This document shows, one piece after another, positions 5,348 to 15,638 of a DNA stretch of 64,000 bases. A model generated the notes under the pieces. That model made no database searches. It was not told where the DNA came from and worked only from the letters and a program-made list of their open reading frames with translations. Numbering within the stretch: the stretch's first letter is position 1; each line of letters starts with the position of its first letter. The position numbers and the translations under genes are program-made. Origin of the DNA: Saccostrea echinata (lineage: Eukaryota); contig NW_026889803.1 of NCBI RefSeq assembly GCF_033153115.1, positions 43,338,001 through 43,402,000 of the forward strand, in the 5' to 3' direction.

Positions 5348-5576
5348 ATGTCAACTATTTGGACAATGGCGATCTGTTTATTCTTCGTTCCGGTGACACA
5401 AGCCGCTCAGGATTACGTGTATGTTTCGGCATGTCCTCGTGGATCTTCAGAATGGCAAGCAGAGGCCACACGGAAAAAATGTCAGGAGCCAACGCCCGAC
5501 TATCTGTGTGCAGCGATAGAAAATTCTCCTGGCCAGTACGGTGAAATTTGCACCAAATATGGTTTGTCCCCATCAG
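5348..5576 (+). CDS. Receptor exon 1: signal peptide and first half of Cys-rich ectodomain
   Basis: MSTIWTMAICLFFVPVTQA-AQDYVYVSACPRGSSEWQAEATRKKC...YLC...EIC; donor CAG|GTAT. Confidence 0.8.
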
Positions 5577-13600: not shown

Positions 13601-15638
13601 TTGAGCTATGTGCACCATTTTTTTTCTGTCCATTTCGTCATTTTTATTTGTTTGTGATCTACGATCACTGTCCTTTTGACCCAAAAAAATCCCATTATAC
13701 CAAGTAATACCAAATGGCAAATAATCTTTGCCTCTAGATTTTGATATAACCGGTCATATTTTAAAACGTTTTTCTTATAGGAGATGGTGTATCAATTGTT
13801 GAAAAAGACGTATCATGGAAACTTACAGGTCTTCAACGCTACCTTGTTGTTTGTCTAAAGCACTATATAGGCATCGAAGAATTGAAAGAAAAAGTAATTC
13901 TTTTCAAAAGTTCTCTGGACGAACATTTCAACGAGGTATTGCTAGAACCCTTACAAAGACTACAGTCTCCTGATGATTATGAAGAAGTGGATATATTAGT
14001 AGTTTACAATCTTCTTCGTAATGTTTGTGAACACATATATCCCCCTAAACGGGGATGGGACTACGAACCCGATGAAACTGACTTAGGACTGGGAGCTGAT
14101 ATTGAGAGGGCACGCCTAATGTGGAATAGATATTGCGATGGAAAGACTGTATTTGATGACTTGGATGCTTTATATGAAAGAATGCAGGAAAGATATGGAA
14201 ATATTGCGGTGAACATTAATGAAAAGCAGGATGTCGACCAGTGCCAAATGCCTAAAGAAAAAATATCGCCAAGTAAGTGCAAATAAAAAAAACTATCTTG
14301 AGTATTTGGATATTTATATGATACTTTTATACCAATATTGGCAGAGTTCAATTGCTGTAGAAAAAGTATAATCTTTCGAAACTTTTTGAAAGATAATTAA
14401 AGAATTACAATGAAATATCATTATATTTATTAATAGGTGTTCAACTAAAACCTGCATGCGAAGTTAGAAGTGGGGTTGTCATAAGAAAACAAACAACGTC
14501 GGTAAAGGAAATCCTAAATGAAAGTGGTTTAGCGATTTGTAAAGGTGCCATAGGATGTGGGAAGACTAGTTTTCTTAAATACTTCGATGAACTATACCGA
14601 GGATTAGGCTGGATTGTAAAATGGAGGGAGGAGGTTGTCAACAGTAATGATGTCTTTGTGAGAGAAAATGAGAAGATTCTTTTATGTTGCGATAACTTTT
14701 TTGGAACCTTTGACCGATGTGCCTACAGTGCCACGTCAGAAATTATTAATTTTTTAAATCATCGAGAAAAAGATGATGGTGGCCAACTGAAAATCCTGCT
14801 GGCTATTCATGATCATGTATATGATGAGTTGCAGAAGAATACCTCGATAAATATTCTACAAAATAAACGTGCAGTAGTTGACTTGAACGAGATAACCAAT
14901 GCTGAACAGATGCTAATTTTTAAAGAGCAAAGAAAGAATGGTCATTGTACCATTGATCCGAAATGTTGGTTCCGAAGGGTTGACTTTGAATCGCTGAAAA
15001 ATGCATTAAAACGGAATTCAGGATTAATTGGTGATCCAGCTTTAACTTTACTATATTGTAACCATCATGACATATTTGCCAAAAAAGAAGCCACATTAAA
15101 CCCTCTGAAAACACTGTGCTCTTTATTTCAGAATATTTCAGGAAAACCAAAGTTATTCAATATTCTTGTGTTCATCTTGTTTATTAAAACACATACCTTT
15201 GATAAGGAGATGCCAGCCTGGGCTGCAGCGGAACCGTTTGGACTAACAACTGATGAGATCCGGGAAAATGTCCGACATCTTCATGGATATCTTGATGTTT
15301 CTGTTGATGGAAGGACAATGAAAATGAAACATGAATTGTTAAGCATCGGTTTGTTCCACATTTGTGCAAGGGATCCTATCTATTTACCTGCTCTTTTAAA
15401 TCATTGCCACTTTCAGATGATAGAAGAACTCTTTCGTCCATCCAACTCTGAAACCCAGTCAGACTTTTCCATCATATTGGATGAAACCAATTTCCAAACA
15501 TTAATTTCTAGAATTATGAGAGACAATATGTATGTGAACCTTATAAATCACCCTTTCTTGCAAAATACTCAATTCTGTTTGAATTTGAAAAATAGTTGTC
15601 CGGATGACCTTTGGAAACGTTTCTTTTCAAAAAAGTGA
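5348..15638 (+). CDS. Type I transmembrane protein: signal peptide, 8-Cys ectodomain, S/T stalk, TM, DZIP3-like HEPN, nSTAND3 NTPase (~823 aa, 10 exons)
   Basis: Exons 5348-5576, 7367-7474, 7566-7602, 8604-8675, 8836-8987, 9243-9293, 9847-9933, 13089-13130, 13781-14272, 14437-15638. All introns are GT-AG with compatible phases; total 2472 nt = 824 codons including TGA, no internal stop. AATAAA at ~15732. An extra micro-exon could hide in the gap at 12909-13041. Confidence 0.8.
6450..6550. mobile_element. 101-bp hairpin MITE with 9-bp TSD
   Basis: CATCGTCGAATACCCACGGGTGATCT...AGATCACCCGTGGGTATCCGACGATG, flanked by TGTGCAATC at 6441-6449 and 6551-6559. Confidence 0.85.
7367..7474 (+). CDS. Receptor exon 2: Cys-rich ectodomain
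   Basis: GTCAVLNAQTYNLDSVPCVAPVGCPDKPYNPGELYN; TCAG| acceptor and |GTGAGT donor, phase 1 to phase 1. Confidence 0.8.
7989..8319. mobile_element. hAT-like MITE with 16-bp TIR and 5-bp TSD
   Basis: CAGGGGTGTGCAATTA...TAATTGCACACCCCTG; TSD CAAGG on both sides; internal ACTAGCCC repeats. Confidence 0.85.
8836..8987 (+). CDS. Receptor exon 5: transmembrane helix and basic stop-transfer
   Basis: GLVAGIIIVFLLVLVVSLVTLYIL followed by DKRNKWGLRKAIRKR. Confidence 0.8.
10520..12159. mobile_element. Non-autonomous mariner-type element with TA TSD
   Basis: TA|CGAGGGGTGATCAAAAAGTTCGCGAACTA ... TAGTTCGCGGACTTTTTGATCACCCCTCG|TA; no transposase ORF. Confidence 0.85.
10598..11245 (+). mobile_element. Pearl/HINE-type (non-autonomous Helentron) element nested in the mariner element
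   Basis: TTATACCCC..hairpin..GTATAATG start, (GTCA/GTCC)n microsatellite, and 3' GTGAGCTTGCT hairpin followed by a T-run. Boundaries approximate. Confidence 0.65.
12227..12800. mobile_element. MITE-like element with 19-bp imperfect TIR
   Basis: AAGAAGAAGGTACGGTTTT vs AAAACCGTACCTTGTTCTT. Confidence 0.55.
12909..13041. other. Assembly gap (other gaps: 16306-16440, 36285-36429, 57075-57296)
   Basis: N runs. Confidence 1.
13781..14272 (+). CDS. Receptor exon 9: DZIP3/hRUL138-like HEPN domain
   Basis: VDILVVYNLLRNVCEHIYPPKRGWDYEPDETDLGLGADIERARLMWN matches the family signature D(I)xLLYxLLRN..PPxxGW..P..D.S.GADIERxR..RN. Confidence 0.8.
14437..15638 (+). CDS. Receptor exon 10: nSTAND3-type P-loop NTPase with helical/winged-helix region
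   Basis: Walker A GAIGCGKT (14544-14567), Walker B ILLCCDNFFG, sensor strand KILLAIHDHVY, GxP motif IGDPAL, and HD-like MKHELL. The exon is in frame upstream of the ORF-track start at 14658. Confidence 0.85.

What the first reader, a model, noticed from the sequence alone, without database searches (positions are those of the whole stretch)
5348..15638. Cell-surface receptor wired directly to a HEPN-nSTAND3 module (an NLR/Avs-like protein with an extracellular sensor)
Seen: ten phase-compatible exons, most invisible or fragmented in the ORF track, join without a stop into signal peptide + 8-Cys ectodomain + S/T stalk + TM + linker + DZIP3-type HEPN + STAND NTPase, and the protein ends after the helical region. 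Known: STAND NTPases (animal NLRs, bacterial Avs) are normally cytosolic, with an N-terminal effector and a C-terminal repeat sensor (LRR, TPR or ankyrin); many HEPN domains are dimer-activated RNases. Inference: the C-terminal sensor is absent and an extracellular Cys-rich domain takes its place, so ligand-driven clustering at the membrane could switch a HEPN-STAND signalling unit. I do not know of a characterised receptor with this architecture.
Basis: partly seen in the sequence, partly recalled or inferred. Interest (0 to 1): 0.92.

Follow-up and report, generated by a model that had tools for sequence, protein, structure and literature searches.

The report
Oyster membrane receptor with HEPN-STAND tail
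This is a real, expressed oyster gene for a single-pass membrane protein whose outer part is a small cysteine-rich domain and whose inner part is an NLR-like ATPase switch preceded by a probably inactive RNase-type domain; the design is unusual and has never been studied at the bench, though similar designs have been noted in oysters by computer analysis.

Summary
Ten GT-AG exons (5348-15638, + strand) join into an 823-aa protein. It is identical to the RefSeq protein 'uncharacterized protein LOC133205741' of Saccostrea echinata. RNA contigs from two studies carry the six 3' splice joints. One 1843-nt contig links the membrane-helix exon to the HEPN and STAND exons. The assembly gap lies inside intron 7 and RNA splices across it.

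Pfam confirms HEPN_DZIP3 and nSTAND3 above their cut-offs. The fold model matches NLRP, NOD2, Apaf-1, plant NLRs and Avs proteins, and it has no C-terminal repeat sensor. The same architecture occurs in about 30 protein clusters, and every named one is from oysters.

- The canonical HEPN R-x4-6-H site reads W-N-x3-D in all 27 aligned family members, so RNase output is unlikely.
- Kaur et al. 2021 already described oyster proteins with a Cys-rich ectodomain, a membrane helix and DED plus TRADD-N, followed by variable STAND or HEPN domains.

The ectodomain is the best conserved part and the C-terminal helices are the most variable. Signalling from outside to inside is plausible but untested. I rate this a new variant of a known kind. 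The scan's earlier notes held nothing like it on other DNA.

The parts
5348..5576 (+). Exon 1: start codon, signal peptide (aa 1-19/20, 'MSTIWTMAICLFFVPVTQA|AQ') and ectodomain Cys 1-4
   Evidence: The 'AAQ' boundary and the Cys residues are conserved in alignment A1.
7367..7474 (+). Exon 2: ectodomain Cys 5-7
   Evidence: Paralogous exons elsewhere in the genome.
7566..7602 (+). Exon 3: ectodomain Cys 8 ('WPVCFEDFYG')
   Evidence: Collinear with ortholog P0001. Identical to RefSeq P0045.
8604..8675 (+). Exon 4: S/T-rich stalk with the N-glycosylation sequon NIT
   Evidence: Donor 8675 joined to 8836 in RNA contigs.
8836..8987 (+). Exon 5: acidic juxtamembrane stretch, TM helix (8864-8935, aa 159-182) and basic stop-transfer 'DKRNKWGLRKAIRKR'
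9243..9293 (+). Exon 6: cytosolic linker
   Evidence: Joints 8987/9243 and 9293/9847 in RNA contigs. Disordered in the AF2 model.
9847..9933 (+). Exon 7: acidic cytosolic linker
   Evidence: Joint 9933/13089 in X1 and X3. X5 differs in the 3' part of this exon (unresolved).
12909..13041 (.). Assembly gap, inside intron 7 (9934-13088); no effect on the coding sequence
   Evidence: Not filled.
13089..13130 (+). Exon 8: linker ('DTYEEPLSGIKTSK')
   Evidence: Joints 9933/13089 and 13130/13781.
13781..14272 (+). Exon 9: DZIP3-type HEPN domain (aa about 269-400). The canonical catalytic place 14113-14142 reads 'RLMWNRYCDG'. A look-alike 'RNVCEH' lies at 14017-14034.
   Evidence: Pfam PF18738 at 3.4e-8. 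Motif analysis. pLDDT 87-93.
14437..15638 (+). Exon 10: nSTAND3 NTPase (Walker A 'GAIGCGKT' 14544-14567; Walker B 'ILLCCDN' at 14676-14696, D509 at 14691-14693), helical domain, winged-helix domain, short helical tail, stop TGA 15636-15638
   Evidence: Pfam PF20720 at 4.1e-11. AF2 plus Foldseek hits to NLRP2, NOD2, Apaf-1, NRC and Avs. Coordinates checked.

Best explanation
Shown: LOC133205741 of the oyster Saccostrea echinata is one expressed ten-exon gene. It encodes a type I single-pass membrane protein with, in order: a signal peptide; a roughly 100-aa alpha/beta ectodomain with 8 conserved Cys; an S/T stalk; a TM helix; a disordered acidic linker of about 85 aa; a DZIP3-type HEPN domain; and an nSTAND3 STAND NTPase (NBD, helical domain, winged helix and a short helical tail) with no repeat sensor. 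It belongs to a family that, as far as named records go, is confined to oysters, with several paralogs per genome on one chromosome. Inferred mechanism: the protein is a membrane-tethered STAND switch of innate immunity or cell-death signalling. The conserved ectodomain binds a conserved extracellular or luminal ligand, or a partner carrying the same domain. This raises the local concentration of the cytosolic part under the membrane. The NTPase then binds ATP (Walker A intact) and oligomerises as NLRs, Apaf-1 and Avs proteins do. The arrayed HEPN domains act as a scaffold or adaptor rather than as an RNase, because the canonical catalytic Arg and His are replaced in the whole family.
For: One gene, one transcript: an 1843-nt RNA contig carries all six 3' joints, and a second study shows the same chain. 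The model equals RefSeq P0045. Orthologs of 780-880 aa with the same layout occur in S. cucullata, Ostrea edulis, Crassostrea virginica, gigas and angulata. Whole ORFs of 781-816 aa sit on Logan contigs of only 3.5-3.8 kb, as expected of intron-free transcripts. Three further loci on the same chromosome keep the order ecto exon 1, ecto exon 2, HEPN, STAND. Topology: a single TM helix with mean hydropathy above 3, and 9 K/R in the 20 residues after it against 0 in the 15 before. Domains: Pfam hits above cut-off. AF2 pLDDT is 87-93 for HEPN and 75-92 for STAND. Foldseek finds NLRP2/5/7/9, NOD2, Apaf-1, NRC1-3, ZAR1, Avs3, Avs5 and ORC/Cdc6 at probability about 1. Walker A and the Walker B Asp are invariant. 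Dead HEPN: W374, N375 and D379 are invariant, where canonical paralogs read R-N-x4-H. In the pearl oyster, 194 of 202 DZIP3-HEPN proteins keep Rx4-6H (PMC9646362). Ectodomain as a functional module: it is the best conserved domain (0.61). It also occurs on stand-alone short membrane proteins, and by predicted structure on other mollusc nSTAND3 clusters. Immune context: the DZIP3-HEPN plus STAND combination is expanded in bivalve immune gene clusters.
Against: No experiment bears on ligand, localisation, nucleotide binding, oligomerisation or output. 'Cell surface' is not shown; the N-terminal domain could face the lumen of an internal compartment. High conservation of the ectodomain is unlike most pathogen-binding surfaces. 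The most variable folded part is the winged helix plus C-terminal helices (0.34 and 0.29), which could be the real sensor. Walker B is followed by Asn, not a second acidic residue (26 of 27 sequences), so hydrolysis may be weak. In this gene and 4 of the 26 aligned relatives an R-N-x3-H string exists 30 residues upstream of the canonical site, so some RNase activity cannot be excluded. No infection-response data were found for any ortholog.
Confidence: 0.55

Rival explanations
1. Membrane-anchored cytosolic sensor. The ectodomain and TM helix only place and perhaps pair the protein on a membrane. The variable winged-helix and C-terminal helical region senses a cytosolic ligand, such as a viral or microbial protein, as the C-terminal parts of NLRs and Avs proteins do.
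For: The winged-helix and C-terminal regions are the most variable folded parts (0.34 and 0.29 mean identity against 0.61 for the ectodomain). Some paralogs have lost or are losing the Cys-rich exons while keeping TM, HEPN and STAND: P0006 and P0005, and a TAA inside the ecto exon 2 of the locus at C54:1475817.
Against: The C-terminal tail is only about 85 aa after the winged helix, which is small for a sensor. Strong purifying conservation of 8 Cys and many surface positions of the ectodomain across six oyster species argues that it does more than anchor.
Confidence: 0.22
2. Ligand-driven clustering dimerises an active HEPN RNase that cleaves host or viral RNA, like a membrane-bound relative of RNase L or Ire1.
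For: The HEPN profile match is above cut-off. R339-N-V-C-E-H344 fits the R-N-x3-H consensus in this gene and its closest orthologs. Most DZIP3-HEPN domains are thought to be active (PMC3710099; PMC9646362).
Against: The canonical site is W-N-x3-D-G in all 27 family members. H344 is present in only 5 of 27, and canonical paralogs carry R-N there without His. So 'LLRN' is a structural motif of the family, and the His looks like a chance substitution in a loop after the helix.
Confidence: 0.1
3. Non-immune role. It is a homophilic or heterophilic adhesion or developmental receptor that uses the STAND module as a regulated scaffold, unrelated to defence.
For: The ectodomain is conserved. Stand-alone ecto-TM paralogs could be partners. 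There is no expression link to infection.
Against: The family is restricted to one lineage, tandemly duplicated and variable in copy number, with decaying copies. It is built from domains typical of bivalve immune expansions.
Confidence: 0.1
4. Artefact. Two adjacent genes, an ecto-TM gene and a HEPN-STAND gene, were wrongly merged.
For: Stand-alone ecto-TM genes and HEPN-STAND models without the Cys-rich ectodomain both exist in this genome.
Against: Spliced RNA contigs from two studies chain the TM exon through exons 6-8 into HEPN and STAND. There is no stop or start between them. The same fusion is seen in six species and on short transcript-like contigs.
Confidence: 0.02

Closest known systems
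Receptor-like TRADD-N proteins of Crassostrea (Kaur, Iyer, Burroughs, Aravind 2021, eLife, PMC8195603)
   Same: Oyster lineage-specific expansion. An N-terminal cysteine-rich extracellular domain and one TM helix are followed by cytosolic apoptosis or immunity domains that can include STAND NTPases and HEPN. The authors proposed that outside stimuli trigger them.
   Different: Those proteins have a constant DED plus TRADD-N module right after the TM helix. Here a disordered linker of about 85 aa leads straight into HEPN-nSTAND3, and no DED or TRADD-N is detectable. Whether the ectodomains are homologous was not tested. Both are known from sequence analysis only.
Cytosolic bivalve HEPN(DZIP3)-NACHT/STAND proteins (Anantharaman 2013, PMC3710099; Takeuchi 2022, PMC9646362)
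   Same: An N-terminal DZIP3-type HEPN precedes a STAND NTPase, and the genes are tandemly expanded in bivalves. This genome has more than 130 DZIP3-HEPN exons.
   Different: Those are cytosolic, usually carry C-terminal LRR, TPR or WD40 repeats and keep Rx4-6H (194 of 202 in the pearl oyster). This family has a signal peptide, ectodomain and TM helix, no repeats, and has lost the canonical Arg and His.
Animal NLRs and Apaf-1
   Same: The predicted NBD, helical and winged-helix module superposes on NLRP2, NLRP3, NLRP7, NLRP9, NOD2, NLRC4 and Apaf-1. An effector-type domain sits N-terminal to the NTPase.
   Different: The NTPase matches the nSTAND3 profile, not NACHT or NB-ARC. There is no LRR or WD40 sensor. 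The protein is membrane-inserted with an extracellular part.
Bacterial Avs5 (SIR2-nSTAND3-TPR) and other Avs proteins
   Same: Avs5 NTPases are annotated with the same Pfam family, PF20720 (bioRxiv 10.1101/2025.07.08.663546). Foldseek hits 9jap, 9nc9 and 8dgc.
   Different: Avs proteins are cytosolic, with a C-terminal repeat sensor and enzymatic effectors. There is no detectable sequence relation outside the NTPase.
Type I immune receptors that signal by clustering (Toll-like receptors, death receptors)
   Same: What it may work like: an ectodomain, a single TM helix and a cytosolic homotypic-assembly domain.
   Different: There are no TIR or death domains. The assembly module would be an ATP-driven STAND oligomeriser, which no characterised surface receptor uses.

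Membership tests
HEPN superfamily, DZIP3/hRUL138 type (PF18738) | Profile match above the curated cut-off | tested here: met
   33.8 bits against a cut-off of 27, E 3.4e-8, HMM positions 36-91 of 144. The same holds in 9 of 10 relatives scanned. It aligns with canonical DZIP3-HEPN exons of the same genome.
HEPN superfamily, DZIP3/hRUL138 type (PF18738) | R-x4-6-H catalytic motif at the canonical helix | tested here: not met
   The canonical place reads M-W-N-R-Y-C-D-G. W374, N375 and D379 are invariant in 27 sequences. Canonical paralogs L039 and L040 read R-N-E-V-S-G-H and R-N-E-C-Y-G-H.
HEPN superfamily, DZIP3/hRUL138 type (PF18738) | All-alpha HEPN core fold confirmed against solved HEPN structures | tested here: inconclusive
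   The AF2 model is all-helical at aa 269-398 with pLDDT 87-93.
STAND NTPase, nSTAND3 (PF20720) | Profile match above cut-off; Walker A GxxxxGK[ST]; Walker B hhhhD | tested here: met
   43.3 bits against a cut-off of 27.2. 'GAIGCGKT' and 'LLCCDN' are present, with G460, G463, G465, K466 and D509 invariant. The residue after the Walker B Asp is Asn, not Asp or Glu.
STAND NTPase, nSTAND3 (PF20720) | NBD, helical domain and winged-helix module as in NLR, Apaf-1 and Avs | tested here: met
   AF2 secondary structure and pLDDT 75-92. 42 PDB matches at E <= 1e-3, led by NLRP, NOD2, Apaf-1, NRC, ZAR1, Avs3, Avs5 and ORC/Cdc6.
STAND NTPase, nSTAND3 (PF20720) | C-terminal repeat sensor (LRR, TPR, WD40 or ankyrin), usual though not universal | tested here: not met
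   No repeat family in Pfam. The model ends about 85 aa after the winged helix. All 27 relatives end likewise.
STAND NTPase, nSTAND3 (PF20720) | Nucleotide-dependent oligomerisation | not testable with these tools
   Needs purified protein.
Animal NLR (NACHT-LRR) | NACHT profile, LRR sensor, cytosolic location | tested here: not met
   No NACHT (PF05729) or LRR hit at E <= 0.01. A signal peptide and TM helix are present.
Oyster receptor-like TRADD-N expansion (Kaur 2021) | Cys-rich ectodomain plus TM helix at the N-terminus | tested here: met
   Homology of the ectodomains was not tested.
Oyster receptor-like TRADD-N expansion (Kaur 2021) | Constant DED plus TRADD-N module after the TM helix | tested here: not met
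   No Death-superfamily or TRADD_N hit in the exons or in P0001. Residues 195-268 have pLDDT below 50. The genome search with PF09034 was silent, but its controls were silent too, so that search says nothing.
Type I single-pass membrane protein | N-terminal signal peptide, one TM helix, positive-inside charge bias | tested here: met
   Hydropathy, the small residues at -3/-1 in 'VTQA|AQ', and 9 against 0 K/R across the helix. No dedicated signal-peptide or topology predictor was on hand.
Type I single-pass membrane protein | Presence at the cell surface | not testable with these tools
   Needs tagging, surface labelling or protease protection.

The most novel reading that the evidence does not exclude
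Molluscs possess a class of 'outside-in STAND receptors'. In these, an extracellular Cys-rich domain directly gates an ATP-driven NLR-type oligomerisation switch across the membrane, with no cytosolic repeat sensor. The design appears in at least two families: this one, with a catalytically dead HEPN adaptor, and a second one in which the ectodomain and TM helix lead straight into nSTAND3, with or without ankyrin repeats. It would be the first link between surface recognition and STAND-type assembly in any animal.
Probability: 0.3. Interest if true: 0.85.

Novelty: new variant of a known kind. Interest (0 to 1): 0.6.

Why it matters
STAND NTPases (NLRs, Apaf-1, plant NLRs, bacterial Avs) are thought of as cytosolic sensors, and surface receptors as a separate branch of innate immunity. 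A protein that joins an ectodomain to a STAND switch through one membrane helix would show the two logics fused in one molecule. It would also give a simple system to ask whether STAND oligomerisation can be driven by receptor clustering instead of by a C-terminal sensor. The invariant loss of the HEPN catalytic residues offers a natural case for asking what a pseudo-HEPN domain does, whether as adaptor, decoy or RNA binder. For oyster biology, this is a small, oyster-restricted, tandemly duplicated family. It is a candidate for resistance studies on OsHV-1, Vibrio and transmissible neoplasia, but nothing yet ties it to any of these.

Tried and rejected
- **Two-gene or chimeric model:** rejected by spliced RNA contigs.
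- **Hidden exon or frame break in the N gap:** rejected. RNA joins 9933/13089 and the ortholog is collinear. The gap was not filled.
- **Intact catalytic HEPN:** my first reading of 'RNVCEH' was dropped after alignment with canonical paralogs and the family.
- **HEPN homodimer by complex prediction** (aa 262-405, two copies): no answer, score 0.00, controls not run. This is no evidence either way.
- **Ectodomain fold:** a proxy model of the single-exon paralog L016 (pLDDT 86-96 over the ectodomain) gave no Foldseek PDB match (best E 0.88). The VIA-align wide list was filled by the long TM and tail helix, so the ectodomain was barely tested. I do not claim a new fold. The Atlas label 'FZ domain-containing' for one look-alike cluster is not backed by any Pfam Fz hit, and the model is alpha/beta.
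- **PDB by sequence and by family profile:** only weak P-loop hits.
- **TRADD_N (PF09034) in the genome:** silent, and its controls were silent too, so it is uninformative.
- **Literature on orthologous LOC ids:** none found.
- **Joined model:** I handed no self-joined model to any search tool. Exons were searched by reference. Joining was done only inside a script to check phase and to compare with P0001. Full-length searches and folds used the public protein P0045, which a search returned and which proved identical to the model.
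Full report
**What is in the sequence.**
The window is G000:C54:43338001-43402000 of a 923-Mb, intron-rich genome. On the + strand between 5348 and 15638 lie several stop-free pieces with obvious coding character. A script searched GT/AG boundaries for a frame-keeping chain that best matches a related public protein. 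It gave ten exons: 5348-5576, 7367-7474, 7566-7602, 8604-8675, 8836-8987, 9243-9293, 9847-9933, 13089-13130, 13781-14272 and 14437-15638. All have canonical splice sites and polypyrimidine-rich acceptors. Together they encode 823 aa with no internal stop.

The product is identical to P0045, the RefSeq protein 'uncharacterized protein LOC133205741 [Saccostrea echinata]'. Exons were searched by reference, and full-length work used the public protein P0045.

**The gap and the transcript.**
The N run 12909-13041 lies inside intron 7 (9934-13088). One search found five runs holding the HEPN-STAND exons. They are small contig sets whose RNA nature is proved by the spliced joints. Laying four of them on 8560-14559 gave GT..AG joints at 8675/8836, 8987/9243, 9293/9847, 9933/13089, 13130/13781 and 14272/14437.

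- In run X1 all six joints share one depth (20.7) and lie on one 1843-nt contig. Its pieces cover the TM exon, the HEPN exon and the start of the STAND exon.
- Run X5, from another study, shows the same chain on two contigs that overlap in exon 8.
- The contig has 479 nt upstream of 8836, which matches exons 1-4 (446 nt) plus a short leader.
- RNA therefore splices across the gap, and the S. cucullata ortholog aligns collinearly at that joint. The gap hides no exon and does not disturb the frame. It was not filled.

**Domains.**
- **Profiles.** Pfam finds HEPN_DZIP3 in exon 9 (33.8 bits, cut-off 27) and nSTAND3 in exon 10 (43.3 bits, cut-off 27.2). The other exons match nothing.
- **Membrane features.** Residues 159-182 form the only strongly hydrophobic segment. 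It has no basic residue in the 15 aa before it and nine in the 20 aa after. The N-terminus has a hydrophobic core and a 'VTQA|AQ' site. The region between holds eight Cys, then a 39% S/T stalk with one N-glycosylation sequon. These are the features of a type I membrane protein. No dedicated predictor was available, and surface location is not shown.
- **Fold model.** AlphaFold2 on P0045 with a 27-sequence family alignment gave pLDDT 87-93 for an all-helical HEPN region and 75-92 for the NTPase. The linker 195-268 is disordered and the ectodomain is moderately confident.
- **Structure search.** Foldseek against the PDB returned 42 matches at E <= 1e-3. They are led by NLRP2/5/7/9, NOD2, NLRC4, Apaf-1, plant NRC and ZAR1, Avs3, Avs5 and ORC/Cdc6.
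- **C-terminus.** The protein ends about 85 residues after the winged helix, and there are no repeats.

**The HEPN domain is probably not an RNase.**
Canonical DZIP3-type HEPN exons of the same genome read 'IRNEVSGH' and 'LRNECYGH' at the catalytic helix. This gene and its six paralogs in this genome read 'MWNRYCDG' or close variants there. In the 27-sequence alignment from six oyster species, W374, N375 and D379 are invariant. For comparison, 194 of 202 DZIP3-HEPN proteins of the pearl oyster keep Rx4-6H (PMC9646362).

An 'RNVCEH' string 30 residues upstream fits the motif formally. However, the R-N there is a general feature of DZIP3-HEPN domains, and the His is present in only 5 of 27 sequences.

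**Family and genomic context.**
- **Range.** The STAND exon has only 31 relatives at E <= 1e-3 among 1.84 billion representative proteins. Every named one is from Ostreidae.
- **Shared layout.** About 30 clusters of 780-880 aa share the layout of signal peptide, 8-Cys domain, TM helix, HEPN and nSTAND3. Two come from Logan contigs of only 3.5-3.8 kb, as expected of intron-free transcripts.
- **Paralogs.** In this genome, three more loci on the same chromosome keep the exon order ecto 1, ecto 2, HEPN, STAND. One of them has in-frame stops.
- **The ectodomain elsewhere.** It also occurs on four tandem single-exon genes that encode only signal peptide, ectodomain, TM helix and a short tail. By predicted structure it occurs on other mollusc nSTAND3 clusters, some with ankyrin repeats. 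A locus on C14 has ecto-like exons, a TM exon and an nSTAND3 exon in order on one strand, without HEPN.
- **Conservation by domain.** Mean pairwise identity is 0.61 for the ectodomain, 0.54 for HEPN, 0.51 for the helical domain, 0.44 for the NBD, 0.34 for the winged helix and 0.29 for the C-terminal tail.

**How it most likely works.**
The architecture, the expression and the membership of the two cytosolic domains are shown. The rest is inferred.
1. A conserved ligand, or a partner with the same ectodomain, brings receptors together.
2. The STAND module, freed from or lacking a repeat-domain lock, binds ATP and oligomerises under the membrane.
3. The arrayed pseudo-HEPN domains recruit or hold downstream partners.

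The main rival is that the membrane part only anchors the protein and the variable C-terminal helices sense a cytosolic ligand. The active-RNase version has little support, and the merged-gene artefact is excluded.

**Comparison with what is known.**
- DZIP3-HEPN fused to NACHT-type ATPases, with expansions in the oyster, was tabulated in 2013 (PMC3710099).
- More than 50 cytosolic HEPN-NACHT proteins were described in the pearl oyster (PMC9646362).
- Most relevant is Kaur et al. 2021 (PMC8195603). They described about 50 C. virginica proteins with a Cys-rich extracellular domain, a TM helix and a DED plus TRADD-N module. A variable region follows that can include STAND NTPases and HEPN. They suggested that adherence of pathogens or cells triggers them.
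- The present family lacks DED and TRADD-N, joins HEPN-nSTAND3 directly, and has a dead HEPN site.
- nSTAND3 is also the Pfam family assigned to the NTPase of bacterial Avs5.
- No paper mentions the orthologous loci, and no bench work exists on any such receptor.

**Verdict.**
It is a new variant of a kind already outlined in silico.

Noticed in passing
window 119-721 (- strand): A 201-aa ORF, head-to-head with the receptor gene, gives a weak TIR_2 match (E 7e-4, 20.5 bits, below the cut-off of 28). The TIR assignment is not secure.
   Followed up: partly
window 23077-27116 (+ strand): ORFs with retrotransposon gag, reverse transcriptase/RNase H and integrase domains indicate an LTR retrotransposon downstream of the gene. 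Observed only.
   Followed up: partly
window 10360-12760 (intron 7): Many RNA contigs, 90-95% alike and at high summed depth, lie here in all four runs, with internal joints that are not GT..AG. This looks like transcribed dispersed repeats rather than part of this gene.
   Followed up: no
window 9874-9933 (3' part of exon 7): The contig of run X5 (second study) joins 9873 to 13087 with 25 unaligned letters in place of 60 reference letters. It could be a divergent allele, an indel or another donor site. Unresolved.
   Followed up: no
L044, L043, L041 (G000:C14:12355151-12373805, - strand): A second possible ecto-TM-STAND gene without HEPN. It has ecto-like exons at 12373805-12373608 and 12365489-12365310, a TM exon at 12357487-12357347, and an nSTAND3 exon from 12356278 (PF20720 at 6.9e-12). 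Not verified as one transcript.
   Followed up: partly
L015-L018 (G000:C10:7142846-7155016, + strand): Four tandem single-exon genes encode only a signal peptide, the same 8-Cys ectodomain, a TM helix and a tail of about 30-50 aa. They could be partners or decoys of the long receptors.
   Followed up: partly
L011 (G000:C54:43408794, about 7 kb past the window end) and L031 (C54:43520815): RefSeq protein P0052 (LOC133204910, 789 aa) joins ectodomain exons just beyond this window to HEPN-STAND exons 112 kb further on. This is either a very long intron or a doubtful gene model.
   Followed up: no
G000:C54:1472339-1476453 (- strand; L004, L013, L023, L034): This paralog has in-frame TAA stops in the ecto exon 2 and in the STAND exon. 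The RefSeq model P0005 for this cluster starts just before the TM helix. It looks like a copy that is losing its ectodomain, or decaying.
   Followed up: no
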